Assembly (NCBI RefSeq): GCF_006345805.1
Contig: NC_043026.1
Span: 5,208,001 to 5,272,000, forward strand
DNA from: Octopus sinensis
Lineage: Eukaryota
Direction of reading: 5' to 3'
DNA: 64,000 nucleotides
The notes under the pieces are model-generated. The model did no database searches. It was not told the origin of the DNA and saw only the letters and a program-made list of their open reading frames with translations. The position numbers and the translations under genes were made by a program. This document shows positions 32,201 to 61,600 of the stretch, in pieces; the stretch's first letter is position 1; each line of letters begins with the position of its first letter.

Positions 32201-33347
32201 TAGGCTCTCGATAGAGGCCCCCTCAATCTGGATGGTCACTACTACTGTTTTTCCACCCCAATTGTCGTTTAGGTACACGGCTGTTTCTAGAATATTGATC
32301 TTTTTCAAGTGGTAACAGATTGCCCTGTTATCCATTTGTTCGGCATATCGGGGGGCACATTTCTGATAGCAATTCTACTCACCCTCTGGTTTTTATAATA
32401 AGGGACCATGATGATTTCATCATTTCCCAGAGACTCAGTAGAGTGAGCTTTTGCCACTTCCTGGTTAGGGAAGCGGACCACTACTGTGTTAAACTGGGGA
32501 CCCCAGTTTATATACTCTTTTTCTTTCATTATGTTTTTTAAACATTTCTCTACATCAGTTTTTGTAATCTGTTCATTGGTTTTTTGTTTTTTCTAATAAT
32601 TTTATATACAATTGTCTTATTTTCTATTTCTTGTTTTATATGTTGAGGTGTATGCAGGACTAAATCTTGTCCACGGGTTGTAAAGAGAGCTCTTGTTTCT
32701 ATGAGCTCTTCATTTGTGAATGTAACAATCTCCTTTTTCTGGCGAAGAATATCTGCGAAATTTACTGTTGTTGACTTTTTTGTATTAACATCTTCACTAT
32801 TAGATAGTTCATTTTTATTGTTGTTCTTGTTGTTGCTGTTGTTTTTGTCAATAGTTTTCGTTTCAGTTTTATTTTTATCATTTATGTTGGTCGTGGTAGC
32901 GGTGGTGGTGGTGGTGGAGGAGGTGGTGGTAGCATTTGTTGTCTCGTGGTTGCTGTTGTTAGTGGTGGTGGTGGCGGTGGTGACAGGGCTGTTAACGCAC
33001 GTGGTTGCAGCGTTCATTTCACCGAATTTTACGTTTGCATTTTCCGTGCGAACGTTCTTTTTTTTCTCTATCGTTTCCAGACTAGGAAAATTTTGTTCCA
33101 TAAAAGAACGCGACCAGCGTTCTACAATAAAATTTCTAGACATTTTCTAATGTCGAGAATAAAATTACAGAAATGAAATGGGGTCGAAACTGCCCCTAGG
33201 GGCGAATTCCTCCCTTGGAAAAGCACTCAAACGAAAGTTGGTTGCCTTACACACCTTATTTGCAAAAATTTACACAAAAATTGGGCTATAAATAGTCAAA
33301 ATGAAAGATTACCTTCGGAGTCGAAGCGATAGCACATCCATAGACAG

Positions 33348-41563: not shown

Positions 41564-42892
41564 GTACGTATTTATTAATATATAGACACCTGTCTATATC
41601 TATGTGCTTTTATGTATCTTTATATATATGTGTGTGTGTGTGTCTAAGGTGAGCTGGTAGCAGAATCATTAGAACAGCAGGTAAAATGCTTGGCGCATTT
41701 CGTTTGACTTGATGTTCTGAGTTCTAATTCCAGCAAGGTTGACATTTAGACTCGGTGAACTCTGGGACTGATGTAATCAACTTAACCCATTATTGCAGGC
41801 CTTGTGCCAAAATTTGAAACCAAGAAATATGTACATGCATACAGGTAAGCCTTTTATGTCTCTGCTTTGCCCCAATACAATCTGTTCCCTCACCTCCTGC
41901 ATAAAAACTCCTCCCCCCACAACACATCCCAAGTCCTTCCTTCCTTCCACCCTTAATCATCACCCCCTGCATGCTCCTCTCCCCCCATCACACACACTCA
42001 CTCTCAATGTCCTCACTGGCCCCCTGAGCTGCCCCTATATCTCTCACTGTCACCTGCTACTCTCTCCACATCTCCATCCACCTCCCTTCACACCCTCATG
42101 AATCACCCCCACCCCTTGATCTCCTCTGTCCACTCACCCTGTCCAATCCTTTGTATGGCCCTCATTTCATTCATATTCTCCCCCACTGTACCTTAAGAAT
42201 TTGTCCCATCACACATCTCCCCTGCCATTTATTTCTCTCTCTTTCAAACGGGGATAGCCAAGTATCTCCTACAGGAAGACCCCTATCTCTACCCTGATCC
42301 CTATTATACATTCACCTCTCAACTGGCACAAACCCACCTCCCTCAATACTACTCCTCCCTTCCTGTTGAGACATCTTCGTTTTGCAAGTTACTTGGTGGT
42401 GCCATGTGAAAAGCACTCTGTGAAGTGGTCGGCATTAGGAAGGGTATCCAGCCATAGAAACCAATGCAATGTGGCCAACACAGCTTGGTGCAGTCCTCTG
42501 GCAAACTGTCCAACCCCGTAGCAGAACAGAAAGTCGACTTTTCATACATACACACACACACACACACATTCATTCATACAGACACACAGACAGACAGAAA
42601 GCTAGATCACATGACCAACAAGACTATCCGATGTTGCGACACATCGCTAGGCACAATTCACTTTGCATTGTTTTAGCCATCGAATGACCCCCAACCCTCG
42701 GGCTAGGCAAGCAGGCCATCCCTCTCCATGCCACTGATGTTATCCAATGGGAAAGCAACATGAAATAAAGTGTCTTGCCCAAGAACACAACACAGAGCCC
42801 GGTCTGAGAATCGAACTCACTATCCCATGATTGTGGAACCAATGCTCTAACAACAGATCCATCCACTGCACACACACATACAAACACACATA

Positions 42893-44103
42893 GAGGGGTT
42901 GGACAAAATAATGGAAACACCTTAAAATTTCAAATAAATCTATTTTAATATGGGGAAGAACCGCCTTTGGCAATAATTACAGCTTAAATTCTATGAGGTA
43001 TGGACTCGTACAAAGTTTGAAGGGTTTCCAAAGGAATTTTTGTTCATTCTTCAGCTAAAACAGTCTCCAGTTCTTGTAGTGATGATGGTGGAGGATATTG
43101 ACACCTTGTTTTTCTAAAATGAACCATAAATGTAAAATAATATTGAGATCTATGGACGTAGTGGCCAGATAAGATGTTCAACTCAACTAGTATGTTCCTC
43201 GTGCCATTCGGTAACAACTTCAGCTGTGTGAATTGGTGCATTATCATCCTGAAAGATTGTATTTCCATCCAGAAACAGTTCTGCAACCATAGGATGAATT
43301 TGATCAGATAAACTGCTTAAATAATCCTGAAAATAAATTCTACCATTAAGGGAAACCATTGGGCTGGTGGATTTCCAAGATATAGCCCCCACCAGATCAT
43401 CACAGATCCTCTTCCATATTTAACAGTTAGAAGAAGGCAGTCTGGGTCAAATGCTTCTTTTGGCTCTCTCCACACATATACTTGGCCAGTGGTCAGAAAT
43501 AAGGTAAAGGATGACTCTTCCGAAAAAATAACATGCTTCCATTGATCTAGGGACCAATTCTGTAGGTTTTTACTTCACTCTAAATGCTTTGCAACGTTTG
43601 TTTTTGAAAGTAGTGGTTTTCTGATTGCAGCCTTCTCATTAAATCCAGCTTTGTGCAGCTCCTGGCAAACAGTTTTTGTGGAAACTGGGTTCTCGAGGTG
43701 GTCATTAAGCTCTGCAGTAATTTTGGGAGCTGTATTTTTTGTGATCCTTTCTAATAATTCGTGTAAGAGTCGGATGGTCCCTGGAGGTTTTTCCCTCTTT
43801 CTCAAAGGCTGTCATTACTTTCGAGGCACTACTTCTTGATACACCAAACATTGTGGCTGTTTTCTTTATGCTAGCACCTGTCATATAAGCACCAACAATT
43901 TGACCTCTTTGGAAGTCCAATCAATTTGTCATTTTAATGAATTTTAATTACCTTTTTCTGATGATATCTGAAAAGAAAGAGCAATTTTAGCAAAACATAT
44001 TAAGCAACACTAATAATAAATCAAAAAACATAAAAATAAACAAGCTTTTGACAGTTTTATAGATATTTCAAAATTATGATGCTAGGTGTTTCCATTATCC
44101 AAA

Positions 44104-44105
<2 letters not shown>
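42893..44105 (-). mobile_element. Degenerate Tc1-like transposon, copy 1
   Basis: TIR core taatggaaacacct at both ends with TA flanks; MDFQRGQIVG, IRKPLLSK, IFQDDNAPIHTA fragments. Confidence 0.9.
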
Positions 44106-44153
<48 letters not shown>

Positions 44154-44165
44154 GTGTGTGTGTGT

Positions 44166-44350
44166 ATACAAGAGAGTGTGCCTATGGTGGAGCCAACAGA
44201 GGGACCAGCTATTCGAATAGACAGTACCATGGTAGATAAAGCCATGAGACATATGAAAATGAAGGAAGCCCCTGGCCCCTCAAGAATCACCACGGAAGTG
44301 CTTAAAGTATCTGGTGGTGTGGCATATGGTAGCAGGGAAAGCACCCGTTA
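44166..44350 (+). mobile_element. Short RTE fragment joined to an RTE-type tail
   Basis: ESVPMVEPTEGPAIRIDS...APGPSRITTE then gttaaatgatgatgat; duplicated at 53895-54085. Confidence 0.8.
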
Positions 44351-45030
44351 AATGATGATGATGATGATGATGATAATGCACACACACACATAATTATACA
44401 TACATATCTATGCAGAGAGGTATATATAGCCGACTGGAGAGGGTTTCTCACAAGCATTTCCTGTAAGGAGAATTCCCTTCCTGAAAGAATTTATACAGCA
44501 AAGGTCTTTCCATGTCTGTGTACAGGAACCTATGAAATATACTATATATTTAAACACAACTCCATAAATTTCAATCAACGCTGTTTAATCAGCATCAAGT
44601 TAACGAATTCCTGTAAAGCTTTGCATCTGTCAGAAAATGTTTTCCGTTTGGTTGAAATAAATGTCTTGACATCACTCAGGTGCAATGAAGTATGCACACG
44701 GATTCAACATCCTTCGCAAAAACACTTCTATGTGTTTCATAGCCCTGTTATACACAAACACACACACACACACACATCTTTTATCTCTTACTTGCTTCAC
44801 TTGTTTGACTGTGGCCATGCTGGGGCACAGCCTTGAAGAATTTTTAGTCAAAGAAATCAACCACCACAATTTATTTTTTAAAGCCTACTCCTTATTCTAT
44901 CTGCCTCTTTAGGTTTCGTGTTTCCCTTAATAGATGATCCCTTCGAAAACCCTCATCAAATTAGAATATTTTATTTTCAATTTGCTTTAGGTTTTGTGTG
45001 TTCTTCCTATAACTTTTATTCGATCAGCCA

Positions 45031-45123
<93 letters not shown>

Positions 45124-45504
45124 TAGATATAGGTAGATAGATAGATAGACAGACAGACAGGAAGAAAGATAGATTCATACATATGTTCATACATACATTC
45201 ATACATATATACATAGACACAAACATATGTATATATATATATGTATTTATATAAGTGTATATAATTGAGATTCATTTGAATTAGGTACTTCAGTTGATGC
45301 ACAAGTCAGTGTGGTATTATCCATGCAGGATTTGAGTAAAATTATATTAATGTGTCTGATTGATTGAAAATTCTATTTATTTATTTGTTCAGCTGAGGAT
45401 AGCCCTGCATTGAAACTGATGTAATGATTGCATTGTTCAATGAAATGGAGCCACTTGAGACGGTCATACTGCAGCACCTCTTGATATTCTGTTGCTTATT
45501 TTGA

Positions 45505-45560
<56 letters not shown>

Positions 45561-46930
45561 GTGTGTGTGTGTGTATGTATGTATATATACACACATACAC
45601 ATACAGTTTATTTTGTGTATAATGCTTGCTGATGAATTAAAGAGAGAAGGTAATGCACTGCCCATAGCCTATTCAGTACCTCAAAACCTGTGAAATAGAG
45701 AATTTCATGAGAAGAATAGTAACGGTGGTATATTAGGGATACTTAATATGTTTTGACCCTTGGTGAGATGCTGCGTAATGTTACTTTGAACAGTATGTCA
45801 CGGCTGGAGTGTCTTGGATTTTAGACTTGAGGGATCAAGTCTGAGTTGGGACTAAACAATACTTCCCTGCCCCAGCAACAGGGACCACCATCATCATCAA
45901 TACTATAATCCCCTTACGCATTCCTACCCTGACCACCTCTACGATTTATTCAAATGCTTTGTTTGGATCCTGAATGGAATCTGTGGAATGCCGAAGTGAG
46001 GAAGGTGTGTCTGTTATTTTATTTATTGCCCCTGAAATAATGAAAGGTAAATTTGATTTGAGCAGGATTTGATCTCAAAACACAGAACTGAAACAATTCC
46101 TGCAAAAATGCCAATTGGTTACCATGGTAACCAGATAGTAAAAGTGGCTAAGCCTCCATTCAAATCAGAGAATGGCTATTGTAGATAATGTAATTTCAGC
46201 ATAAACCAAAGACAGGGTCGTCATGGCTAGAATGTCTTTAATCAAATGTTTTCTTGATCTAATATGACCTTGGAGGTATGCAACAACAACTAGAATACCA
46301 TGGAAACCCACGCATGAAACTGGTAGAGTATGGTGTCAGCTTGATGCAGTAGTAGTATATCCGAAACAGTGAAGCTGTGGCTGGCATCCAGTGATTTGAT
46401 CAACAGAGATGAGATGACAGCAACAATGACAACATCAACAATAGCACACACACACACACGCAGCAAGGTAACAATCCCTAATTGCCTTGTTAAAATATGA
46501 GTCACCAGAAAATAAATGGAAAAACCTGAAGTAAACTGATACTATCAAATGATACGACGACACCTGACAAGTAAACAATCCCATGGGTTAAAAAATATTG
46601 TCAAATGATACCAGCTCACTGTAGAGGCCAGTCACGCTGTCCATTGATGTTATTCAAGATAATATTGGCTTACACACTCTGCTCTCATATTCAGTCTGAA
46701 ACAATGAATTTGTAACCTTTTTCTTTATTTTGGGTTTGTTGCAAATATTTCAAGAAATTTTATCCTCATTTGAAATGTCAGACAGAACGTTGTATAAGTA
46801 AATTTAAAGCTGGTGGTGTGTGTGTGTGTACTTACATGTACACACACATATATATAAACATGCATATACATAGACATACGCACACACACACACACGTATA
46901 TATGATATATACATATATATACAGACAATA

Positions 46931-46968
<38 letters not shown>

Positions 46969-47026
46969 CTCACATTTAACAACTGACAACTATCTGCTGC
47001 TGTCTGCACCCCCCTCTTACCCTCAC

Positions 47027-47061
<35 letters not shown>

Positions 47062-47297
47062 CACTCAGTATCTCTCTATCTCTTCTTTTCTCTCTGTCGC
47101 ACTCATTCAATTGCAATCACTCTTTTCCTCTTTCTCTCTCCGTCTTTTCGCACACCACATTGACAAGTGTTCACGTATACCTATGTATGTACAGATATAT
47201 ATATACATATATATATGTATGTATATACGCATATATCTATGTATGTATGTGTGTATATATATATATATTTATGTATGTATGTATATATTTATATGTA

Positions 47298-47341
<44 letters not shown>

Positions 47342-47344
47342 AAC

Positions 47345-47750
47345 ATATATCTCTCTTTTACTTCTTTCGGTCATTAGACTGTGACCATGCTGGAGCCCCA
47401 CCTTTAGTCGAACAAATCGGCCCCAGGGCTTATTCTTTGTAAGTCTGGTACTTATTATGTTGGTCTGTTTTGCCGAACCGCTATGTTACGAGGACATGAA
47501 CACACCAACATTGGTTGTCAAGCGATGTTGGGGGAACAAACAAAGACACACACAAACACACACACACATATATACATATATACGACGGGCTTCTTTCAGT
47601 TTCCATCTACTAAATCCACTCACAAGGCTTTGGTCAGCCCGAGGCTATAGTTGAAGACATTTGCCCAAGGTGCCACGCAGTAGGACTGAACCCAGAACCA
47701 TGTGGTTGACAAGCACGCTACTTACCACACAGCCACTCCTGCGCCTATAT
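47345..47750 (-). mobile_element. CORE-like SINE
   Basis: Same head, core and tail as 4290-4670. Confidence 0.85.
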
Positions 47751-48256
47751 TTTGCAAATATTTCAATAAATTTTATCCTCATTTGAAACGTCAGACAGAA
47801 CGTTGTATAAGTAAATTTAAAGCTGGTGGTGTGTGTGTGTGTGTACTTACATGTACACACACATATATATAAACATGCATATACATAGACATACGTGCAC
47901 ACACACACACACGTATATATAATATATACATATATATACAGACTGTGTGTGTATATATATATACACATTTAACAACTGACAACTATCTGCTGCTGTCTGC
48001 ACCCCCCTCTCACCCTCACACCCTCTCTCTCTCTCTCTCTCTCTCTCTTACACACTCAGTATCTCTCTATCTCTTCTTTTCTCTCTGTCGCACTCTTTCA
48101 ATCGCAATCACTCTCTTCCTCTATCTCTCTCCGTCTGTTCGCACACCACATTGTCAGGTGTTCATGTATACATACGTACGTACAGATATATATATATACA
48201 TATACATATATATATATATGTATGTGTGTATGTATATATGCATATATCTATGTATG

Positions 48257-48293
<37 letters not shown>

Positions 48294-48374
48294 GTGTGTA
48301 TGTATATATATGTATGTATGTATATATTTGTATGTATGTGTATATATATATATATATCTATATATGTATGAACA

Positions 48375-48805
48375 TATATCTCTCTTTCACTTGTTTCGGT
48401 TATGAGACTGTGGCCATGCTGGAGCACCGCCTTTAGTAGGGCAAATCGACCCCAGGACTTATTCTTTGTAAGCCTAGTACTTATTCTATCAGTCTCTTTT
48501 GCCGAACCGCTAAGTTATGGGCCTCTAAACACACCAGCATCAGTATTCAAACGATGTTGGGGGTACAAATACAGACACACAAACATAAACACTCACACAC
48601 ACACACACACACACACGCACACACACATATACATACACACATACATATTGATGACAGGCTTCTTTCAGTTTCCATCTAGCAAATCCACTCACGAGGCTTT
48701 GGTCAGCCCGAGGTTATAGTAGAAGACACTTGCCCAAGGTGCCACGCAGTGTGACCGAACCCAGAACCATATGGTTTGTAAGCAAGCTACTTACCACACA
48801 GCCAC
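48375..48805 (-). mobile_element. CORE-like SINE
   Basis: Same family; its paralogue in unit 2 is at 58180-58580. Confidence 0.85.
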
Positions 48806-48808
48806 ATG

Positions 48809-48851
<43 letters not shown>

Positions 48852-50618
48852 CATCTTGTTTTTTTATCATCTTTTAAACGTTAGGAATATCTTACAGATT
48901 TCATCGTTCTGGATATTGTGCTAGAATTAAAGCAGTTCCTTCGTTCCCCAATACCCCCAGTTCAGCTATATTTCACTCCTAATTGATTGGTACTTATGCT
49001 ATTGCTCAAATAACAGAAGGGAGAAATTTATCCTGGGTACGGGATTTGCAAACACCTTATCAATCGTTGATAGACGTTTGCATTCTCTTGTACTTTTGTA
49101 GCCATATTGGTCACCATAAGACTGTTGATTTCTATAACAGAACAGGTCGTTTCTTTTTGCTTGATTATAATATGTGTGCATGTATGTATGTTTGTATGTA
49201 CTTACATATAAGAGTCGCAAGTGTATGTATGCCACTATATTTTTTTATATATAAAAAATACAAAAATGGGACTAGAACCCTAAACTGCAGACAGTTAGGT
49301 GATATAAAAAAGGGACAACAAAACATCCAGATGAAACGGGAATAAGGACAGGTCAATTGGAGTGTCTTTCCTCAGTTGAATTCCAGGTTATCTTTGCAAT
49401 TTTGGCTGGTTATACTCCAGATTGCTCCAATCTGGCCAGCCCCAAGGAAAAGCTAAGCTAAGAGCATTAGATTCCTTGGAAGAAAGCAGTGAATGTATAC
49501 AAAAACAAGGACAGAAAAAAATGGAGAAATGGTACAGAAATACAAATAACAAGACATTAACAAGAGGTGTCTTTTGACTAAGGACAAATTAAATTAAGCT
49601 GGCATGTGTGGAAGTAAAGCCTTACGGCAGGGTCATAAGATTTGACAGGCACAGGGAGGAATATAGATGTTGCACGGATGGTAGTCGAACCAAGAAAGAA
49701 AGAGGAGTGAAGGTGAGCATGGAGAGAAGGCCAGGAAATGTGAGAGAGGGGGAATGAAAGAACGAAGAGTGGAATGAACGAAGTAAGTGTGAAGGGGCTG
49801 AGAGAAAGAAGGAAAGAATAATAGAGTCATACAAAATTTAGATATATATATATATACATACCTACATACAAGAGACCAAAGTATACGTACACCGCTTTAT
49901 TTTATTTTTTTTATATAAAAAATACAAAACTGGGACAAGAACGCAAAACATCCAGAAAGGTGATACAAGAAGGGGACAATAAAACATCCAGACAGACGAA
50001 ACAAGGATGGGTCATTGGGAGTTTTCTTTCCTCAGTTGAGTTCCAGATTATCTTTGCAATTTCGGCTGGTTATACTCCAGATTGTTCCAGACATTTGTAG
50101 TTGTGATGTAAATGCTGAGATGTTTGAAAAGAACCCATCCTCGCTGCTTTCTTGCTTTGTTTGTTTCCTTCCTGCTTTTGCTTCTCACATTCTCACCCTC
50201 TCTTCTTCTCTCTCACTCCCTCCATTTTTTGCACAGATCTTCGCCATCCTGCTAAATTCCTCATCACCTACAGGGGCATGAATTTCAGTTCCATCGAATG
50301 CTTTCCATTTTCTCAACAGACAAAGGCAGGAACAGCTGAAACTATTTCTTGTAAATATTTACCATCAATATTTCAGACATTTTTTAAAAGACTTGAATGT
50401 ATGCCAGCAGTTGTTTTATGTGTGTGTGTGTGTGTGTTCTTTTACTGGGGGAAAGAGAGAGAGAGAGAAAGAAAAAAGAAAGAAATGAGACAAAGGAAGA
50501 GAGACAGAGAGGGAGAAAGAAAGAGGGAAATAGACAGATAGAGAAGAAAGAAAATCATAGTGATGGTGCCTGATTTTGTTTTCAGTTTTTGGAACTAACA
50601 GAGAAATAGAATCTCTCT

Positions 50619-50753
<135 letters not shown>

Positions 50754-50754
50754 G

Positions 50755-50842
<88 letters not shown>

Positions 50843-50933
50843 ATGTATGTATATATATATAGATATATATAATATATAGATATATATATATATATGGAGA
50901 GAAAATATTTTCCTGAGACAGTTAAGATAAGAC

Positions 50934-50970
<37 letters not shown>

Positions 50971-51084
50971 TACATATACGTATATACACAACAGACGAAC
51001 TTCATTCCACCAAATGACCATAAACCAGACATTATAAATCTCATGGCTATAAGTACAAAAAGTAATGAATTCATAGAACACATC

Positions 51085-51336
51085 CAATTATGTCAGACAC
51101 GCTTGGAGGACTTCCTTGGGATTTCTTGCCCCTTAGAGTTAGTGGGCGACTGGAATGCCATCTTGGATGCACGTGTGGATTGGGTGGGACTACCGGACAT
51201 GAAAGTTGGGGTATGTAAGCTTCACAAACCTGCTCATTCATTTCCAATTGGCTGACAGTTTCAGACTGGATTTTCCGAATGCCTCAAGGTGGACGTGGGC
51301 AAATATTGTTGGGACATCCAGATCTTATCTAGACAA
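51085..51336 (+). pseudogene. Tx1-type endonuclease fragment
   Basis: RLEDFLG...LVGDWNAILD...FQLADSFRLDFPN...SRSYLD; duplicated at about 60490-60738. Confidence 0.8.
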
Positions 51337-52359
51337 TCTGTTCCCCCACCTCCTGCATAAAAATTCCTCCCTCCCACAACACATCCCAAGTCCTTCCTTC
51401 CTTCCACCCTTAATCATCACCCCCTGCATGCTCCTCTCCCTCCCCCATCACATACACTCACTCTCAATGTCCTCACTGGCCCCCTGAGCTGCCCCTATAT
51501 CTCTCACTGTCACCTGCTACTCTCTCCACATCTCCATCCACCTCCCTTCACACCCTCATGAATCACCCCCACCCCTTGATCTCCTCTGTCCACTTACCCT
51601 GTCCAATCCTTTGTACGGCCCTCATTTCATTCATATTCTCCCCCACTGTACCTTAAGAATTTGTCCCATCACACATCTCCCTTGCCATTTATTTCTCTCT
51701 CTTTCAAACGGGGATAGCCAAGTATCTCCTACAGGAAGACCCCTATCTCTACCCTGATCCCTATTATACATTCACCTCTCAACTGGCACAAACCCACCTC
51801 CCTCAATACTACTCCTCCTTTCCCATTGAGACATCTTCGTTTTGCAAGTTACTTGGTGGTGCCATGTGAAAAGCACTCTGTGAAGTGGTCGGCATAAGAA
51901 GGGTATCCAGCCATAGAAACCAATGCAATGTGGCCAACACAGCTTGGTGCAGTCCTCTGGCAAACAGTCCAACCCCGTAGTAGAACAGAAAGTGGACTTT
52001 TCATACATACACACACACACACATACACATTCATTCATACAGACACACAGACAGACAGAAAGCTAGATCACACGACCAACAAGACCATCCGATGTTGCTA
52101 CACATCGCTAGGCACAATTCACTTTGCATTGTTTTAGCCATCGAACGACCCCAACCCTCGGGCTAGGCAAGGAGGCCGTCGCTCTCCATGCCACTGTTGT
52201 TATCCAATGGGAAAGCAACATGAAATAAAGTGTCTTGCCCAAGAACACAACACAGAGCCCTGTCTGGGAATCGAACTCACTATCCCAGGATTGTGGAACC
52301 AATGCTCTAACAACTAAGCCATGCACCTGCACACACACAAACACATACACACACAAATG

Positions 52360-53560
52360 GAGGGGTTGGACAAAATAATGGAAACACCTTAAAATTTCAA
52401 ACAAATCTATTTTAATATGGGGAAGAACCGCCTTTGGCAATAATTACAGCTTAAATTCTATGAGGTATGGACTCGTACAAAGTTTGAAGTGTTTCCAAAG
52501 GAATTTTTGTTCATTCTCCAGCTAAAACAGTCTCCAGTTCTTGTAGTGATGATGGTGGAGGATATTGACACCTTGTTTTTCTAAAATGAACCATAAATGT
52601 AAAATAATATTGAGATCTACGGACTGTGGTGGCCAGATAAGATGTTCAACTTGACTAGTATGTTCCTCGTGCCATTCGGTAACAACTTCAGCTGTGTGAA
52701 TTGGTGCATTATCATCCTGAAAGATTGCATTTCCCTCCAGAAACAGTTCTGCAACCATAGGATGAATTTGATCAGATAAACTGCTTAAATAATCTTGACA
52801 ATTAATTCTACCATTAAGGGAAACCATTGGGCTGGCGGATTTCCAAGATATAGCCCCCACCAGATCATCACAGATCCTCTTCCATATTTAACAGTTAGAA
52901 GAAGGCAGTCTGGGTCAAATGCTTCTTTTGGCTCTCTCCACACATATACTTGGCCAGTGGTCGTAAATAAGGTAAAGGATGACTCTTCCGAAAAAATAAC
53001 ATGCTTCCATTGATCTAGGGACGAATTCTGTAGGTTTTTACTTCACTCTAAATGCTTTGCAACGTTTGTTTTTGAAAGTAGTGGTTTTCTGATTGCAGCC
53101 TTCCCATTAAATCCAGCTTTGTGCAGCTCCTGGCAAACAGTTCTTGTGGAAACTGGGTTCCCGAGGTGGTCATTAAGCTCCTCAGTAATTTTGGGAGCTG
53201 TATATTTTGTGATCCTTTCTCATAATTCATGCACCTGAAGTTCCCTGGAAGTTTTTCCCTCTTTCTCAAAGGCTGTCATTACTTTCGAGACACTGCTTCA
53301 TGATACACCACACATTGTGGCTGTTTTCATTATGCTAGCGCCTGTCATATAAGCACCAACAATTTGACCTCTTTGAAAGTCCAATCAATCTGTCATTTTA
53401 ATTACCTTTTTCTGATGATATCTGAAAAGAAAGAGCAATTTTAGCAAATCATATTAAGCAACACTCATAGTAAATCAAAAAACATAAAAATAAACAAGCT
53501 TTTGACAGTTTTATAGATATTTCAAAATTATGATGCTAGGTGTTTCCATTATCCAAACCA
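52360..53560 (-). mobile_element. Degenerate Tc1-like transposon, copy 2
   Basis: As copy 1; retains WPPQSVDLNI. Confidence 0.9.
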
Positions 53561-53574
53561 TATATATATATATG

Positions 53575-53682
<108 letters not shown>

Positions 53683-53719
53683 ACTAAAATAATTTAAAAT
53701 TGAATAGAAGATCTGAAAT

Positions 53720-53765
53720 CCACCTGATGAATGTCCTTTGAAGAGACACGAAACAATTGTAGTCG
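53720..53765 (+). ncRNA. Type I minimal hammerhead ribozyme (weak stem I)
   Basis: ccac-CTGATGA-a tgtc ctttgaaga gaca c-GAA-ACAATTGT-A-gtcg, inside a ~185-bp insert (53683-53868) in (TA)n. Confidence 0.75.
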
Positions 53766-55463
53766 CGAATTTAATTTTATTTAATTTATATTAAATTTTT
53801 TTATGTATTGGATTAAGTCTTTCTTTGTTTGATTTGCAAAATAGTGGTTTTGTCTCTAATTAATATTATATATATATATAAATGTGTGTGTGCGTATACA
53901 AGAGAGTGTGCCTACGGTGGAGCCAACAGAGGGACCAGCTATTCGAATAGACAGTACCATGGTAGATAAAGCCATGAGACATATGAAAATGAAGGAAGCC
54001 CCTGGCCCCTCAAGAATCACCACGGAAATGCTTAAAGTATCTGGTGGTATGGCATATGGTAGCAGGGAAAGCAGCCGTTAAATGATGATGATGATGATGA
54101 TAATGCACACACACACATAATTATACATACATGTCTATGCAGAGAGGTATATATAGCCGACTGGAGAGGGTTTCTCACAAACATTTCCTGTAAGGAGAAT
54201 TCCCTTCCTGAAAGAATTTATACAGCAAAGGTCTTTCCATGTCTGAGTACAGGAACCTATGAAATATAATATATCTTTAAACGTAACTCTATAAATTTCA
54301 ATCAACGCTGTTTAATCAGCATCAAGTTAACGAATTCCTGTAAGACTTTGCATCTGTCAGAAAATGTTTTCCGTTCGGTTGAAATAAATGTCTTGACATC
54401 ACTCAGGTGCAATGAAGTATGCACACGGATTCAACATCCTTCGCAAAAACACTTCTATGTCTTTCATAGCCCTGTTATACACAAACACACACACACACAC
54501 ACATCTTTTATCTCTTACTTGCTTGACTCGTTTGACTGTGGCCATGCTGGGGCACAGCCTTGAAGAATTTTTAGTCAAAGAAATCAACCACCACAATTTA
54601 TTTTTTAAAGCCTACTCCTTATTCTATCAGCCTCTTTAGGTTTCGTGTTTCCCTTAAATGATGATCCCTTCGAAAACCCTCATCAAATTAGAATATTTTA
54701 TTTTCAATTTGCTTTAGGTTTTGTGTGTTCTTCCTAAAACTTTTATTTGGTCAGCCAATATATATATATATATATATATATATAGATATAGGTAGATAGA
54801 TAGATAGACAGAGAGACAGGAAGAAAGATAGATTCATACATATGTTCATACATACATACATTCATACATATGTACATAGACACAAACGTGTATATATATA
54901 TATGTATATATATATATGTATATTTATATATATGTATGTATGTATATAAGTGTATATAATTGAGATTCCTTTGAATTAGGTACTTCAGTTGATGCACAAG
55001 TCAGTGTGGTATTATCCATGCAGGATTTGAGTAAAATTATATTAATGTGTCTGATTGATTGAAAATTCTATTTATTTATTTGTTCAGCTGAGGATAGCCC
55101 TGCATTGAAACTGATGTAACGATTGCATTGTGAAATGGAGCCACTTGAAACGGTCATACTGCAGCACCTCTTGATATTCTGTTGCTTATTTTGATCTGAT
55201 ATATATAAATATATATCTATATATATATATATATAATTAATCAATATAGGGTGGCAAAAAAAAATTTTGTAGAATTTTTTTGCCACCAGCGGCCTAGTGG
55301 GAAAAAATTAAATAGTCATAGACCATTTTTAAGTTCAACATCAACAATCAAGGAACGGCCATAATAGGCCATTCACCCACTAGAAATAACAGCCAAAGCT
55401 TCAACCGCAAATAAAAATTAATTCCGTAAACCAGGAGAAAATTTAAAAAACATTTACCCTGTA

Positions 55464-55570
55464 ATTTCTTATACGATGCACCGTTTCATCTGCTGTTTAA
55501 TGGTAAACTAACCTGATTAAATTAAATCAAGCCAATCTTCCATAGGCCCTCAGATTCTTCAGTAAGAAAT
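55464..55570 (-). ncRNA. Type I hammerhead ribozyme, monomer 1 (fully canonical)
   Basis: Minus strand: atttctta-CTGAAGA-atctg...cagat-GAA-ACG gtgcat CGT-A-taagaaat. Stem I 8 bp, stem II at least 5 bp, GUA site. Confidence 0.93.
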
Positions 55571-55956
55571 AGCCCAAGTCGGAACAGATATTTTCACGAG
55601 GCATTTCCGACCCTGCCAAGGTAATATCTGACCTAAAATTTTCAAATCGTCGCACTCGCACCAAATTTATCGGCAGCAAATAAATATAAGCCGTCGATTC
55701 CATTACGGAATTAACCAGAAAATTCATAATTAATCAATATAGGGTGGCAAAAAAAAATTTTGTAGAATTTTTTTGCCACCAGCGGCCTAGTGGGAAAAAA
55801 TTAAATAGTCATAGACCATTTTTAAGTTCAACATCAACAATCAAGGAACGGCCATAATAGGCCATTCACCCACTAGAAATAACAGCCAAAGCTTCAACCG
55901 CAAATAAAAATTAATTCCGTAAACCAGGAGAAAATTAAAAAAACATTTACCCTGTA

Positions 55957-56063
55957 ATTTCTTATACGATGCACTGTTTCATCTGCTGTTTAATGGTAAA
56001 CTAACCTGATTAAATTAAATCAAGCCAATCTTCCATAGGCCCTCAGATTCTTCAGTAAGAAAT
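55957..56063 (-). ncRNA. Type I hammerhead ribozyme, monomer 2
   Basis: As monomer 1 except stem III reads acagtgcatcgt (third pair mismatched). Confidence 0.9.
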
Positions 56064-56351
56064 AGCCCAAGTCGGAACAGATATTTTCACGAGGCATTTC
56101 CGACCCTGCCAAGGTAATATCTGACCTAAAATTTTCAAATCGTCGCACTCGCGCCAAATTTATCGGCAGCAAATAAATATAAGCCGTCGATTCCATTACG
56201 GAATTAACCAGAAAATTCATAATTAATCAATATAGGGTGGCAAAAAAAACAGATGAAACGGTGCATCGTATAAGAAATTACAGGGTAAATGTTTTTTTAA
56301 TTTTCTCCTGGTTTTAATTTTCTCCTATTATGGCCGTTCCTTGATTGTTGA

Positions 56352-56390
<39 letters not shown>

Positions 56391-57274
56391 GTGTGTGTGT
56401 GTGTGTATGTATATATACACACATACACATACAGTTTATTTTGTGTATAATGCTTGCTGGTGAATTAGAGAGAGAAGGTAATGCACTGCCCATAGCCTAT
56501 TCAGTACCTCAAAACCTGTGAAATAGAGAATTTCATGAGAAGAATAGTAATGGTGGTATATTAGGGGTACTTAATATGTTTCGACCCTTAGTGAGATGCT
56601 GTGTAATGTTACTCCGAACAGTATGCCACGGCTGGAATGTCTTGGATTTTAGACTTGAGGGATCAAGTCTGAGTTGAGACTAAACAATACGTCCCTGCCC
56701 CAGCAACAGACACCACCATCATCATCAATACTATAATCCCCTTATGCATTCCTACCCTGACCACCTCTACGATTTATTCAAATGCTTTGTTTGGATCCTT
56801 TATGGAATCTGTGGAATGCCGAAGTGAGGAAGGTGTGTCTGGGACTTATTTATTACCCCTGAAATAATGAAAGGTAAATTTGATTTGAGCTGCATTTGAT
56901 CTCAAAACACAGAACCGTAACAATTCCTGCAAAAATGCCAATTGGTTACCATGGTAACCAGATAGTAAAAGTGGCTAAGCCTCCATTCAAATCACTCCTT
57001 ACTTTCATATCAGAGAATGGCTATTGTAGATAATGTAATTTCAGCATAAACCAAAAGACAGGGTCGTCATGGCTAGAATGTCTTTAATCAAATGTTTTCT
57101 TGATCTAATATGACCTGGGAGGTAAGCAATAACAACTAGAATACCATGGAAACCCAAACATGAAACTGGTAGAGTATGGTGTCAGCTTGATGCAGTAGTA
57201 GTATATATGTGGCTGGCATCCAGTGATTTGATCAACAGAGATGAGATGACAGCAACTATGACAACATCAACAAT

Positions 57275-57317
<43 letters not shown>

Positions 57318-57784
57318 CCAGCAGCAAGATAACAATCAGCTTTGTTAAAATATGAGTCACCAGAAAATAAATGGAAAAACCTGAAGTAAACTGATACTAT
57401 CAAATGATACGACGACACCTGACAAGTAAACAATCCCATGGGTTAAACAATATTGTCAAATGATGCCAGCTCACTGTAGAGGCCAGTCACGCTGTCCATT
57501 GATGTTATTCAAGATAATATTGGCTTACACACTCTGCTCTCATATTCAGTCTGAAACAATGAATTTCTTACCTGTTTCTTTATTTTGGGTTTGTTGCAAA
57601 TATTTCAAGAAATTTTATCCTCATTTGAAATATCAGACAGAACGTTGTATAAGTAAATTTAAAGCTGGTGGTGTGGTGTGTGTACTTACATGTACACACA
57701 CATATATATAAACATGCATATACATAGACATACGCACACACACACACACGTATATATGATATATACATATATATACAGACAATA

Positions 57785-57816
<32 letters not shown>

Positions 57817-57876
57817 CTCACATTTAACAACTGACAACTATCTGCTGCTGTCTTTATCCCCCTCTCACCCTCACAA

Positions 57877-57915
<39 letters not shown>

Positions 57916-58109
57916 CACTCAGTATCTCTCTATCACTTCTTTTCTCTCTGTCGCACTCTTTCAATTGCAATCACTCTTTTCCTCTATCTCTCTCCGTCTG
58001 TTCGCACACCACATTGACAGGTGTTCACGTATACCTATGTACATAAAGATATATATATATACAAGTATATATATATGTATGTATGTATATATGCATATAT
58101 CTATGTATG

Positions 58110-58167
<58 letters not shown>

Positions 58168-58179
58168 GTATATATTTGT

Positions 58180-58580
58180 ATGATGTGTTTCGGTTATTAG
58201 ACTGTGGCCATGCTGGAGCACCGCCTTTAGTAGGGCAAATCGACCCCGGGACTTATTCTTTGTAAGCCTAGTACTTATTCTATCAGTCTCTTTTGCCGAA
58301 CCGCTAGGTTATGGGCATCTAAACACACCAGCATTAGTATTCAAACGATGTTGGGGGGACAAATACAGACACACAGACATAAACACTCACACACACACAC
58401 ACGCACACACACATATATATACACACATACATATTGACGACAGTTTCCATCTAGCAAATCCACTCACAAGGCTTTGGTCAGCCCGAGGTTATTGTAGAAC
58501 ACACTTGCCCAAGGTGCCACGCAGTGTGACCTAACCCAGAACCATATGGTTCGTAAGCAAGCTACTTACCACACAGCCAC
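58180..58580 (-). mobile_element. CORE-like SINE
   Basis: Paralogue of 48375-48805. Confidence 0.85.
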
Positions 58581-58587
58581 ATGTATG

Positions 58588-58624
<37 letters not shown>

Positions 58625-61600
58625 TCTTGTTTTTTTATCATCTTTTCAATGTTAGGATATCTTACAGATTTCATCGTTCTGGATATTGTGCTAGAATTAA
58701 AGCATTTCCTTCGTTCCCCAATACCCACTGTTCAGCTATATTTCACTCCTAATTTGTTGGTACTTATGCTATTGCTCAAATAACAGAAGGGAGAAATTTA
58801 ACCTGGGTACGGGATTTGCAAACACCTTATCATTCGTTGATAGACGTTTGCATTCTCTTGTACTTCTGTAGCCATATTGGTCACCATAAGACTGTTGATT
58901 TCTATAACAGAACAGGTCGTTTCTTTTTGCTTGATTATAATATGTGTGCATGTATGTATGTTTGTATGTACTTACATATAAGAGTCGCAAGTGTATGTAT
59001 GCCACTATATTTTTTTATATATAAAAAATACAAAAATGGGACTAGAACCCTAATCATCCAGACAGGTGATACGAAAAAGGGACAACAAAACATCCAGATG
59101 AAACGGAAACGAGGACAGGTCACTCGGAGTGTCTTTCCTCAGTTGAATTCCAGGTTATCTTTGCAATTTTGGCTGGTTATACTCCAGATTACTCCAATCT
59201 GGCCAGCCCCAAGGAAAAGCTAAGCTAAGAGCATTAGATTCCTTGGAAAAAAGCAAATGTATACAAAAACAAGGACAGAAAAAAATGGAGAAATGGTACA
59301 GAAATACAAATAACAAGACATTAACAAGAGGTGTCTTTCGACTAAGGACGAATTAAATTAAGCTGGCATGTGTGGAAGTAAAGCCTTACGGCAGGGTCAT
59401 AAGATTTGACAGGCACAGGGAGGAATATAGATGTTGCACGGATGGTAGTCGAACCAAGAAAGAAAGAGGAGTGAAGGTGAGCATGAAGAGAAGGCCAGGA
59501 AATGTGAGAGAGGGGAAATGAAAGAACGAAGAGTGGAATGAACGAAGTAAGTGTGAAGGGGCTGAGAGAAAGAAGGAAAGAATAATAGAGTCATACAAAA
59601 TTTATATATATATATATATACATACTACATACAAGAGACCAAAGTATACGTACACCGCTTTATTTTATTTTTTTATATAAAAAATACAAAACTGGGACAA
59701 GAACGCAAAACATCCAGAAAGGTGATACAAGAAGGGAACAACAAAACAGGCAGACGACGAAACAAGGACGGGTCATTGGGAGTTTTCTTTCCTCAGTTGA
59801 GTTCCAGATTATCTTTGCAATCTCCAGATTGTTCCAGACATTTGTAGTTGTGATGTAAATGCTGAGATGTTTGAAAAGAACCCATCCTCGCTGCTTTCTT
59901 GCTTTGTTTCCTTCCTGCTTTTGCTTCTCACATTCTCACCCTCTCTTCTTCTCTTTCACTCCCTCAATATTTTGCACAGATCTTCGCCATCACCTACAGG
60001 GGCATGAATTTCAGTTCCATCGAATGCTTTCCATTTCTCAACAGACAAAGGCAGGAACAGCTGAAACTATTCTTGTAAATATTTACCATCAATATTTCAG
60101 ACATTTTTTAAAAGACTTGAATGTATGCCAGCAGTTGTTTTATGTGTGTGTGTGTGTGTGTTCTTTTACTGGGGAGAAGAGAGAGAGAGAGAAAGAAAAA
60201 GAAAGAAATGAGACAAAGGAAAGAGAGACAGAGAGGGAAGAAAGAAAGAGGGAAATAGACAGATAGAGAAGAAAGAAAATCATAGTGATGGTGCCTGGTT
60301 TTGTTTTCAGTTTTTGGAAATAACAGAGAAATAGAATCTCTCTTACATATATATATATATATATATATATACATACATATACGTATATACACAACAGACG
60401 AACTTCATTCCACCAAATGACCATAAACCAGACATTATAAATCTCATGGCTATAAGTACAAAAAGTAATGAATTCATAGAACACATCCAATTATGTCAGA
60501 CACGCTTGGAGGACTTCCTTGGGATTTCTTGCCCCTTAGAATTAGTGGGCGACTGGAATGCCATCTTGGATGCACGTGTGGATTGGGTGGGACTACCGGA
60601 CATGAAAGTTGGGGTATGTAAGCTTCACAAACCTGCTCATTCATTTCCAATTGGCTGACAGTTTCAGACTGGATTTTCCGAATGCCTTAAGGTGGACGTG
60701 AGCAAATATTGTTGGGACATCCAGATCTTATCTAGACAATCTGTTCCCCACCTCCTGCATAAAAATCTCCCTCCCACAACACATCCCAAGTCCTTCCTTC
60801 CTTCCACCCTTAATCATCACCCCTGCATGCTCTCTCCCTCCCCATCACATACACTCACTCTCAATGTCCTCACTGGCCCCTGAGCTGCCCCTATATCTCT
60901 CACTGTCACCTGCTACTCTCTCCACATCTCCATCCACCTCCCTCACACCTCATGAATCACCCCCACCCCTTGATCTCCTCTGTCCACTTACCCTGTCCAA
61001 TCCTTTGTACGGCCCTCATTTCATTCATATTCTCCCCCACTGTACCTTAAGAATTTGTCCCATCACACATCTCCCTTGCCATTTATTTCTCTCTCTTTCA
61101 AACGGGGATAGCCAAGTATCTCCTACAGGAAGACCCCTATCTCTACCCTGATCCCTATTATACATTCACCTCTCAACTGGCACAAACCCACCTCCCTCAA
61201 TACTACTCCTCCTTTCCCATTGAGACATCTTCGTTTTGCAAGTTACTTGGTGGTGCCATGTGAAAAGCACTCTGTGAAGTGGTCGGCATTAGGAAGGGTG
61301 TCCAGCCATAGAAACCAATGCAATGTGGCCAACACAATGTGGACTTTTCATACATACACACACACACACATACACATTCATTCATACAGACACACAGACA
61401 GACAGAAAGCTAGATCACACGACCAACAAGACCATCCGATGTTGCTACACATCGCTAGGCACAATTCACTTTGCATTGTTTTAGCCATCGAACGACCCCA
61501 GCCCTCGGGCTAGGCAAGGAGGCCATCGCTCTCCATGCCACTGTTGTTATCCAATGGGAAAGCAACATGAAATAAAGTGTCTTGCCCAAGAACACAACAC

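What the first reader, a model, noticed from the sequence alone, without database searches (positions are those of the whole stretch)
55234..56352. Best candidate: young retrozyme-like array of 493-nt hammerhead monomers predicted to yield a small circular RNA
Seen: two nearly identical 493-bp units plus 30 bp of a third. Each has a canonical type I hammerhead on the minus strand (8-bp stem I, long stem II, GUA), with cleavage sites at 55472 and 55965, exactly one unit apart. The unit is highly self-complementary (ttaattccgtaa/ttacggaattaa, ctagtggg/cccactag, gtcggaa/ttccgac, cagatatt/aatatctg). The 5' side carries an inverted half-ribozyme (56250-56280) and rearranged monomer pieces. The paralogous site in unit 1 (45509-45560) is empty (TA)n. 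Established: metazoan non-LTR retrozymes are tandem type I hammerhead monomers that self-cleave to unit length, circularise and are thought to use PLE machinery. Inference: a recently mobile cephalopod retrozyme family.
Basis: partly seen in the sequence, partly recalled or inferred. Interest (0 to 1): 0.93.

Follow-up and report, generated by a model that had tools for sequence, protein, structure and literature searches.

The report
Hammerhead retrozyme insertion in an octopus genome
A 1.1-kb non-coding mobile element made of two 493-bp repeats, each carrying a self-cutting hammerhead RNA motif, recently inserted into a TA microsatellite of an octopus-like genome; it is a new cephalopod example of the known animal "retrozymes", not a new kind of element.

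Summary
At 55233-56249 there are 2.06 head-to-tail copies of a 493-bp unit with 3 differences. The minus strand of each unit has every conserved hammerhead core base, an 8-bp stem I, a 68-nt helix II and a GUA cleavage triplet. The cleavage sites, 55472 and 55965, are 493 nt apart. An inverted, rearranged fragment sits at the element's 5' end. A paralogous copy of the surrounding 9.4-kb segment has only (TA)n at this site, so the whole 1.12-kb block is one recent insertion.

The partial tandem, the inverted 5'-truncated piece, the 31-bp extra tail and the (TA)n target are the published insertion signature of Penelope-like elements. No ORF is present. I read it as a non-autonomous, PLE-mobilised metazoan retrozyme in an octopod host.

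Caveats:
- Rfam hammerhead models do not score it.
- The helix II closing pair is A-U, and helix III is stable only as a dimer.
- The upstream ribozyme has a derived A·C mismatch, and the inverted fragment can mask it. This locus looks more like a product of retrotransposition than a good circRNA source.
- No second copy, partner PLE or RNA evidence could be obtained.

Verdict: new member of a known kind, moderate interest.

The parts
55199..55235 (.). Left (TA)n flank of the target microsatellite. The boundary with the element is ambiguous within 55233-55236 because of ATA microhomology.
   Evidence: TRF; sequence; alignment to the paralogue
55233..55725 (-). Unit 1, a full 493-bp monomer. 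It is 3'-most in element (minus-strand) sense, 36% G+C, and has no ORF longer than 66 aa.
55464..55570 (-). Hammerhead 1 (type I). Stem I 55570-55563 / 55471-55464; core CUGAAGA 55562-55556; helix II 55555-55488; GAAA 55487-55484; helix III 55484-55473. Predicted cleavage is 3' of A17 at 55472.
55726..56218 (-). Unit 2, a full 493-bp monomer differing from unit 1 at 3 sites.
55957..56063 (-). Hammerhead 2, the same motif with predicted cleavage 3' of 55965. It carries a derived G->A at position 15.3 (plus-strand 55975), which gives an A·C mismatch in helix III.
56219..56249 (-). 31-bp partial third unit: the 3'-terminal 31 nt of the unit, forming a 5'-truncated tandem copy or 'tail'. It ends on the loop side of the 13-bp hairpin GGTGGCA(n)/T(n)GCCACC.
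   Evidence: hairpin seen
56250..56314 (+). Inverted fragment that reads in element sense on the plus strand, unit sense positions about 234-298. It holds the 3' half of the hammerhead (GAAAC...GUA plus the stem I 3' strand), with no CUGAAGA and no helix II.
   Evidence: (I1, I2)
56312..56351 (+). Rearranged remainder of the inverted arm: a 15-nt duplication (56312-56326 repeats 56295-56309), then sense positions 358-385 (56324-56351).
   Evidence: (D4)
56351..56387 (.). A5 run (56351-55), then the right (TA)n flank of the target microsatellite.
45509..45560 (.). Empty paralogous site: uninterrupted (TA)18CA(TA)7 in copy 1 of the 9.4-kb segmental duplication.

Best explanation
The 1.12-kb block at about 55233-56355 is one recent insertion of a non-coding, hammerhead-bearing retroelement into a (TA)n microsatellite of an octopod genome. 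It belongs to the metazoan 'non-LTR retrozymes', which are now regarded as non-autonomous derivatives of Penelope-like elements (PLEs).

Shown by the sequence:
- The element's sense strand is the window's minus strand.
- The left arm is 2.06 head-to-tail units whose sense 3' end abuts the left (TA)n.
- The right arm is a rearranged 5'-truncated fragment in the opposite orientation whose sense 3' end abuts the right (TA)n.
- The paralogous site is empty.

Inferred integration mechanism:
- The RNA template was unit-after-unit, either a 493-nt circle copied for more than two turns or a multimeric transcript.
- Reverse transcription was primed from the nicked (TA)n target at the most TA-like stretch of the RNA (UUAAUUAU).
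- A second priming event from the other target end produced the inverted arm, with the geometry of twin priming.
- The first cDNA stopped at a 13-bp RNA hairpin.

Inferred RNA cycle of the family, from experiments on other species:
- Tandem units are transcribed.
- The type I hammerheads cut after GUA. They probably act as a double hammerhead, because helix III is a 12-nt self-complementary segment that is weak alone and strong between two copies.
- The 493-nt linear RNA, with 5'-OH and 2',3'-cyclic phosphate ends, is closed by the RtcB tRNA ligase into a highly base-paired circle.
- A PLE reverse transcriptase and GIY-YIG endonuclease acting in trans then reinsert it.

This particular locus is probably a daughter copy with impaired output. 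Its upstream ribozyme has a private helix III mismatch and can be sequestered in a ~70-bp duplex with the inverted fragment.
For: - Tandem structure and near-identity of the units.
- Complete hammerhead core, an 8-bp stem I, and cleavage sites 493 nt apart. The descriptor is expected 0.01 times per shuffled window.
- Filled versus empty site within a 9.4-kb segmental duplication.
- No coding capacity: the longest ORF is 66 aa and has no homologues.
- 36% G+C.
- The circular monomer folds at -135.6 kcal/mol, z = -4.4, with 61% of bases paired.
- Helix III: hairpin -1.2 or 0 kcal/mol, against -19.5, -14.3 or -9.1 kcal/mol for the intermolecular duplex. This matches the dimer-type metazoan hammerheads described in PMC4209133 and PMC7229834.
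- The published PLE insertion hallmarks are all present here: partial tandems, an inverted 5'-truncated copy adjacent to the 5' end, a 30-40-bp tail, (TA)n bias, and hammerheads in pLTRs (PMC8557442).
- Retrozymes are reported to be phylogenetically nested with PLE pLTRs, with consensus lengths of 51-972 bp (bioRxiv 10.64898/2026.07.22.740005).
- Octopus genomes carry PLEs (PMC13282606, PMC8967140).
- The inverted fragment shares one variant with unit 2 and another with unit 1, so all three pieces trace to one template and the differences are private later changes.
Against: - No Rfam hammerhead model matches at gathering score or at E<=10.
- The A10.1-U11.1 pair and the lack of an obvious loop 1/loop 2 contact suggest low intrinsic activity (my own knowledge of hammerhead biochemistry).
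- Only one locus is available, so there is no covariation support and no copy number.
- MFE folds of the long sense transcripts do not contain the hammerhead fold.
- No PLE ORF was seen among the window's large ORFs.
- The target-site duplication cannot be resolved inside (TA)n.
- No expression data are available.
Confidence: 0.7

Rival explanations
1. The unit is simply the pseudo-LTR of an autonomous, coding Penelope-like element. On this reading the locus is a heavily 5'-truncated insertion of that PLE, not a dedicated non-autonomous retrozyme family.
For: The architecture is PLE-type and PLE pLTRs carry hammerheads. Retrozymes and pLTRs are homologous in Xenopus. Severe 5' truncation is common in PLEs.
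Against: Two full units and a third partial unit follow each other directly, with identical junctions and no ORF sequence between them. The insertion, delimited by the empty site, is only 1.12 kb. A truncated pLTR-ORF-pLTR template would leave ORF sequence upstream of the last pLTR. The origin of the unit from a pLTR remains possible and overlaps with the best explanation.
Confidence: 0.15
2. It is a locally duplicated or satellite-like sequence with a fortuitous hammerhead-like motif. There is no ribozyme activity and no RNA circle.
For: No Rfam hit. The helix II closing pair is atypical and helix III is weak. Only a single locus is known, with no relatives found. At 0.01 chance hits per 64 kb, a genome of several gigabases (O. 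vulgaris assembly 2.8 Gb) would hold hundreds of chance matches to my descriptor.
Against: The motif sits in a mobile insertion with retroelement hallmarks: an empty paralogous site, an inverted 5' fragment and a microsatellite target. Helix II is a stable 68-nt hairpin and helix III a 12-nt self-complementary segment, and the descriptor required neither. The unit is unusually structured, z = -4.4.
Confidence: 0.1
3. It is a DNA copy of an exogenous viroid-like circular RNA replicon, captured by a host reverse transcriptase, and not a resident retrotransposon family.
For: It is a small, highly paired circle with a hammerhead and no ORF. No other genomic copy was detected with the data available.
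Against: A ribozyme was found in one polarity only, and no other ribozyme family scored on either strand. The architecture fits PLE-mediated insertion of endogenous retrozymes, which are common in molluscs.
Confidence: 0.03
4. The tandem is an assembly artefact.
For: PLE tandem and inverted structures are known to trouble assemblies.
Against: The units differ at 3 sites. A 31-bp partial unit and a rearranged inverted arm join cleanly to unique flanks.
Confidence: 0.02

Closest known systems
Metazoan non-LTR retrozymes (Cervera & de la Pena 2020, PMC7229834), e.g. the 350-390-bp repeats of the mussel Mytilus galloprovincialis
   Same: Short head-to-tail repeats, each with a type I hammerhead. 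No LTR, PBS, PPT or ORF. G+C below 50%. A highly self-paired predicted circle. The host is a mollusc that also carries PLEs.
   Different: The monomer is 493 nt, longer than the ~170-400 nt reported there, though inside the 51-972 bp range of the 2026 preprint. Helix II is 68 nt where the typical helix is about 4 bp plus a loop. There are only 2.06 copies at one locus. No expression or cleavage data exist. Cephalopods are not mentioned in that paper.
Penelope-like elements and their pLTR hammerheads (PMC4209133; PMC8557442)
   Same: Partial tandem, an inverted 5'-truncated copy at the 5' end, a ~30-bp tail, insertion into (TA)n, and a dimer-prone type I hammerhead on the sense strand.
   Different: There is no RT or GIY-YIG ORF. 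Helix III is 3-4 bp with a palindromic UGCA loop, whereas the 'minimal' PLE hammerhead has almost no helix III. The (TA)n bias was reported for Naiads, which lack canonical hammerheads.
Newt/axolotl satellite 2 hammerheads (retrozymes Rtz_331/353)
   Same: Helix III is too weak for monomeric cleavage and carries a palindromic loop, so two tandem ribozymes can form an extended helix III (double hammerhead).
   Different: The amphibian motifs keep the conserved loop 1/loop 2 contacts and a short helix II, and they occur in about 10^5 copies.
L1 twin priming (Ostertag & Kazazian 2001; cited from my own knowledge)
   Same: Two arms in opposite orientation, each with its 3' end facing the target DNA. 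The 5' ends are joined in the middle with small deletions or duplications.
   Different: L1 uses an APE endonuclease and a poly(A) tail. Here the template lacks poly(A), the target is (TA)n, and one arm is multimeric.
Plant LTR retrozymes (PMC4918200)
   Same: Non-autonomous retroelements whose hammerheads release a circular RNA.
   Different: The plant elements have type III hammerheads inside true LTRs, with PBS/PPT and 4-bp TSDs, and are mobilised by Ty3/Gypsy machinery.

Membership tests
Hammerhead ribozyme, type I | Conserved core: C3 U4 G5 A6 N7 G8 A9, G12 A13 A14, A15.1-U16.1, H17 | tested here: met
   CUGAAGA ... GAA A...U A in both units.
Hammerhead ribozyme, type I | Three helices around the core, with helix I open (5' and 3' ends in helix I) | tested here: met
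   Stem I is 8 bp. Helix II is a 68-nt hairpin at -25 kcal/mol. Helix III is 3-4 bp in unit 1 and 2 bp plus an A·C mismatch in unit 2. The descriptor is expected 0.01 times per shuffled window.
Hammerhead ribozyme, type I | Scores with the curated Rfam hammerhead covariance models | tested here: not met
   No hammerhead family at gathering score or at E<=10. The 68-nt helix II insertion is the likely cause, but that is an inference.
Hammerhead ribozyme, type I | Usual G10.1-C11.1 pair and loop 1/loop 2 tertiary contacts (features of efficient natural hammerheads) | tested here: not met
   The closing pair is A10.1-U11.1. There is no loop 1 at the usual distance, and helix II has an internal loop after 5 bp. 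These features mark efficiency and are not strictly defining.
Hammerhead ribozyme, type I | Site-specific self-cleavage | not testable with these tools
   This needs in vitro transcription.
Hammerhead ribozyme, type I | Covariation that keeps the helices among relatives | not testable with these tools
   No relatives could be retrieved.
Metazoan non-LTR retrozyme | Head-to-tail repeats of a few hundred bp, each with a type I hammerhead | tested here: met
   2.06 copies of a 493-bp unit.
Metazoan non-LTR retrozyme | No LTR, PBS, PPT or protein-coding capacity; G+C below 50% | tested here: met
   The longest ORF is 66 aa with no homologue. G+C is 36%.
Metazoan non-LTR retrozyme | Predicted highly self-paired circular monomer | tested here: met
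   -135.6 kcal/mol, z = -4.4, 61% of bases paired.
Metazoan non-LTR retrozyme | Multicopy family dispersed in the genome | not testable with these tools
   There is one locus in the window and no eukaryotic genome collection to search. The indirect searches were negative.
Metazoan non-LTR retrozyme | Expressed as linear and circular unit-length RNA | not testable with these tools
   No transcriptome data are available.
Metazoan non-LTR retrozyme | Target-site duplication longer than 4 bp, when present | tested here: inconclusive
   The TA tracts are 36 nt on the left and 33 nt on the right, against 36 nt for the first TA tract at the empty site. That is compatible with a long TSD or with slippage.
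Penelope-like element (insertion type) | Partial tandem plus an inverted 5'-truncated copy at the 5' end, a 30-40-bp tail, and a microsatellite target | tested here: met
   compared with the description in PMC8557442.
Penelope-like element (autonomous) | ORF with a PLE-type RT and a GIY-YIG endonuclease | tested here: not met
   There is no such ORF in the insertion. The ten large window ORFs I scanned are LINE APE/RT, Tc1/mariner DDE_3, one weak Torus-domain match, or have no Pfam match. The element is therefore non-autonomous at best.

The most novel reading that the evidence does not exclude
The locus may be a fresh footprint of reverse transcription running more than two turns around a 493-nt circular hammerhead RNA. 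On this reading, integration was by a twin-primed, PLE-type event whose empty site is preserved next door. The ribozyme would be an active hammerhead variant with a 68-nt helix II that current covariance models miss. That would imply an unrecognised, currently mobile retrozyme family in cephalopods, and probably many overlooked long-helix-II hammerheads elsewhere.
Probability: 0.3. Interest if true: 0.6.

Novelty: new member of a known kind. Interest (0 to 1): 0.4.

Why it matters
If confirmed, it would extend animal retrozymes to cephalopods. I found no report of them there in the papers I could search.

It would also offer an unusually clean filled-site and empty-site pair. That pair shows, at base resolution, that a hammerhead tandem integrates with the signature of Penelope-like elements: a (TA)n target, a partial tandem, an inverted 5' arm and a tail. 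The retrozyme-PLE link has so far rested on co-occurrence and phylogeny.

It also flags a hammerhead architecture, with a very long helix II, that escapes the Rfam models. Otherwise the element fits an established class.

Tried and rejected
- Rfam at gathering score on the whole window, and at E<=10 on 1.35 kb and on 126 nt, gave no ribozyme family. The miRNA-like hits at 56361-56450 are (TA)n/(TG)n low complexity, far below gathering score.
- The metagenome scan for CTGANGA-N70-100-GAAACGGTGCATCGTA gave two hits. Both lie in G+C-rich sequence that reads like bacterial coding DNA and lack stem I, so I rejected them as chance.
- The viral and prokaryotic genome scans gave nothing.
- The protein search with the 66-aa sense ORF found no candidate. 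This route would have reached ORF-called fragmentary cephalopod assemblies such as GCA_024449705.1.
- BLAST of the unit against the window found no other copy, only 14-nt chance words.
- A delta-like or viroid-like agent with ribozymes in both polarities is rejected. There is no ribozyme on the plus strand and no sizeable ORF.
- Snap-back (hairpin) cDNA as the origin of the inverted arm is rejected. The arm is not palindromic about the junction: sense position about 463 meets about 234.
- MFE folding of long sense transcripts does not reproduce the hammerhead fold. I treat this as uninformative, because hammerheads in viroid-like RNAs are usually metastable alternatives.
- No text supplements with PLE sequences were available to seed a search for the partner element.
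Full report
**1. What is in the sequence**

Tandem Repeats Finder reports 55233-56249 as 2.1 copies of a 493-bp unit, with 99% matches and score 2013.
- Units 55233-55725 and 55726-56218 differ at three sites: 55444 T/A, 55482 C/T and 55660 A/G.
- The first 31 bp of a third unit follow at 56219-56249.
- The unit is 36% G+C.
- It occurs nowhere else in the 64-kb window.
- Its longest ORF is 66 aa, on the minus strand, and has no detectable homologue.

**2. The hammerhead**

Read on the minus strand, each unit contains the following:

5'-AUUUCUUA | CUGAAGA | 68-nt helix II | GAAA | CGGUGCAUCG | UA^ | UAAGAAAU

- All conserved core positions are present: C3-A9, G12-A14, A15.1-U16.1 and H17=A.
- Stem I is 8 bp.
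- Helix II (55555-55488) is an imperfect but stable hairpin at -25.1 kcal/mol.
- The cleavage triplet is GUA.

A descriptor demanding the core, at least 3 bp at the base of helix II, at least 2-3 bp of helix III and an 8-bp stem I finds only these two sites on either strand of the window. It finds 0.01 sites per dinucleotide-shuffled window. The two sites are copies of one another, so they count as one event. At that rate a genome of several gigabases (the O. vulgaris assembly is 2.8 Gb) would hold hundreds of chance matches. The context therefore matters more than the motif alone.

**3. Qualifications of the ribozyme**

- (a) No Rfam hammerhead model scores the region, at gathering score or at E<=10, even when only 126 nt are searched. 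The 68-nt helix II is the likely reason, but the curated test is formally not met.
- (b) The pair closing helix II is A10.1-U11.1 where G-C is usual, and I see no loop 1/loop 2 arrangement. From general hammerhead biochemistry these features predict modest intrinsic activity.
- (c) Helix III is marginal as a hairpin: -1.2 kcal/mol in unit 1 and not formed in unit 2.
  - The 12-nt segment ACGGUGCAUCGU is self-complementary.
  - Between two copies it forms a duplex of -19.5 kcal/mol (1+1), -14.3 (1+2) or -9.1 (2+2).
  - This is the 'double hammerhead' design described for most metazoan type I motifs, PLE motifs and amphibian retrozymes. Those cut poorly as monomers and well as dimers (PMC4209133; PMC7229834).
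- (d) Unit 2 carries G15.3->A (plus-strand 55975), which creates an A·C mismatch in helix III.
  - The inverted fragment (section 4) has the G of unit 1 at this site and the T-run variant of unit 2 at the 55444/55937 site.
  - Both differences are therefore private changes that arose after one common template was copied.
  - So the helix III change in unit 2 is decay, not design.

**4. The 5' side**

On the plus strand, 56250-56314 reads as unit sense positions about 234-298. That is the 3' half of the ribozyme, from CAGAUGAAAC through the cleavage site and the stem I 3' strand. Next comes a 15-nt duplication (56295-56309 and 56312-56326). Then come sense positions 358-385 (56324-56351), an A5 run, and (TA)n.

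The element therefore consists of two arms in opposite orientation. Each arm has its sense 3' end against the flanking microsatellite, and the 5' ends meet at 56249|56250.

**5. It is an insertion, and a recent one**

The last 22 kb of the window is a tandem segmental duplication with a period of about 9.4 kb: 41877-51332, 51333-60735, and 60736 onward.
- The copies are 88-95% identical.
- Copy 1 aligns with copy 2 up to 55235 and resumes from 56355.
- At the corresponding place, about 45509-45560, copy 1 has only (TA)18CA(TA)7.
- The 1.12-kb block is therefore absent from the paralogue.

The units differ by 0.6% (JC 0.006), whereas the host duplicates differ by JC 0.05-0.13. On the scale used for Octopus vulgaris repeats, where JC 0.09 corresponds to about 25 My (PMC13282606), the units would be on the order of 1 My old. 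This is a rough figure and assumes no gene conversion.

A target-site duplication cannot be read inside (TA)n. TA tracts of 36 and 33 nt flank the element, against 36 nt for the first tract at the empty site. That is compatible with a long duplication or with slippage.

**6. Host**

A LINE reverse transcriptase in the window (18475-21060, minus strand) has its best named relatives in Argonauta hians (63%) and Acanthosepion pharaonis. Closer unnamed relatives (71-73%) lie on short contigs. The cephalopod, more precisely octopod-like, assignment is supported.

**7. What it is**

Craig et al. list the features of PLE insertions (PMC8557442):
- high 5' truncation;
- partial tandems that form pseudo-LTRs;
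- an inverted 5'-truncated copy immediately adjacent to the 5' end;
- a 30-40-bp 'tail' at one end;
- insertion bias for microsatellites, (TA)n for Naiads, with a Zn-finger-like linker proposed to mediate it in Neptune;
- hammerheads within pLTRs of canonical PLEs.

Every structural item is present here, and the PLE ORF is not.

Cervera and de la Pena define metazoan non-LTR retrozymes as follows (PMC7229834):
- short tandem repeats with type I hammerheads;
- no LTR, PBS or PPT;
- low G+C;
- highly self-paired 170-400-nt circular RNAs.

They found them in molluscs, where they coexist with PLEs. A 2026 preprint reports retrozyme consensus lengths of 51-972 bp and places retrozymes as sisters of PLE pLTRs.

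The circular 493-nt monomer here folds at -135.6 kcal/mol, z = -4.4, with 61% of bases paired. The locus therefore meets every sequence-level criterion of a non-LTR retrozyme, that is, a non-autonomous PLE derivative. Copy number, expression, cleavage and the partner PLE could not be tested.

**8. How it most likely arose (inference)**

- Three consecutive unit junctions are identical and contain no ORF. The template therefore carried unit after unit: either a circle copied for more than two turns or a multimeric transcript.
- The left boundary falls in UUGAUUAAUUAU, one of the most TA-like stretches of the unit, with 3-5 nt of microhomology to the (TA)n primer. This fits target-primed reverse transcription starting from a nicked TA tract at an internal site, not at a defined RNA 3' end.
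- The first cDNA (the plus strand) ends at 56249, on the loop side of a 13-bp hairpin (GGUGGCA(n)/U(n)GCCACC). That is a plausible polymerase stall.
- The opposite arm has the polarity expected if the other target end primed on the same or another RNA. This is the geometry of L1 twin priming (my knowledge). Its internal deletions and 15-nt duplication resemble microhomology-mediated template switches.
- A snap-back origin is excluded, because the arms are not palindromic about the junction.

**9. How it would work, and why this copy is a poor source**

For the family, the expected cycle is as follows. It is established experimentally for coral, mussel and axolotl retrozymes in PMC7229834 and only inferred here.
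1. The tandem is transcribed.
2. The hammerheads cleave, probably as a dimer.
3. RtcB ligates the 5'-OH and 2',3'-cyclic phosphate ends into a circle.
4. A PLE reverse transcribes the RNA in trans.

At this locus, release of the 493-nt RNA needs both ribozymes.
- The upstream ribozyme has the helix III mismatch.
- In any transcript that starts upstream of 56314, its 3' half, including the cleavage site, is 96% complementary over 71 nt to the inverted fragment 252 nt upstream (I1).
- The MFE fold pairs the two completely.
- The locus therefore looks like a daughter insertion and not an efficient master copy.
- Such a duplex would also be an obvious substrate for ADAR or small-RNA pathways. That is speculation.

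**10. Rivals**

- The unit may derive from a pLTR of a coding PLE. That overlaps with the main reading, but this insertion itself was ORF-less.
- A fortuitous motif in a satellite-like duplication is unlikely given the insertion signature, but it is not excluded without cleavage data or relatives.
- An endogenised exogenous viroid-like RNA and an assembly artefact are both improbable.

**11. Searches that found nothing**

- The metagenome scan returned two chance hits in sequence that reads like bacterial coding DNA.
- The viral and prokaryotic scans returned nothing.
- The ORF-based protein search found no candidate.
- No eukaryotic genome collection was available, so family size, covariation and the partner PLE remain open.
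- A full-text search for 'hammerhead ribozyme' with 'octopus' returned no report of cephalopod retrozymes. The 2020 retrozyme paper does not mention cephalopods.

**12. Verdict**

It overreaches on 'canonical', on 'family', and on this locus yielding the circle.

It is a new member of a known kind. Two points are of modest interest: the clean filled and empty site showing PLE-type integration of a hammerhead tandem, and a long-helix-II hammerhead invisible to Rfam. Interest 0.4.

Noticed in passing
window 41877-64000: A tandem segmental duplication with a period of about 9.4 kb and at least 2.3 copies: 41877-51332, 51333-60735, and 60736 to the window end. The copies are 88-95% identical. The retrozyme-like insertion is in copy 2 only, and copy 3 ends before the site.
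   Followed up: partly
window 9582-38000: A dense cluster of LINE copies. An apparently full-length APE+RT element lies on the minus strand: ORF1 21981-23741, APE 21252-21923, RT 18475-21060. A near-duplicate lies at 29240-33143, and a related rearranged copy at 24478-29219. Two RT+PHD-finger ORFs lie at 15550-16878 and 36247-37839. The best named relatives are in Argonauta hians.
   Followed up: partly
window 52522-52860 (minus): A Tc1/mariner-type DDE_3 transposase fragment inside the 9.4-kb repeat unit.
   Followed up: partly
window 56361-56450: Rfam E-value hits to mir-297, mir-466, mir-1277 and mir-3149 fall on the (TA)n/(TG)n microsatellite, at about half the gathering scores. They are low-complexity false positives.
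   Followed up: yes
window 55250-55287 and 55743-55780: A 13-bp hairpin in each unit, GGTGGCA(9)...T(7)GCCACC. The truncated third unit stops at its loop side (56249), which suggests a reverse-transcriptase stall point.
   Followed up: partly
window 55921-55991 versus 56244-56314: 71-nt inverted arms, 96% complementary and 252 nt apart, would form a long dsRNA in a sense read-through transcript. This is a potential ADAR or small-RNA substrate in a heavily RNA-editing lineage.
   Followed up: partly
window 11970-12881 (minus): A 303-aa ORF upstream of the LINE APE/RT ORFs, with a weak Torus/zinc-finger-like match (E = 1.8e-5, below the Pfam cut-off). It is probably a LINE ORF1-type protein.
   Followed up: no
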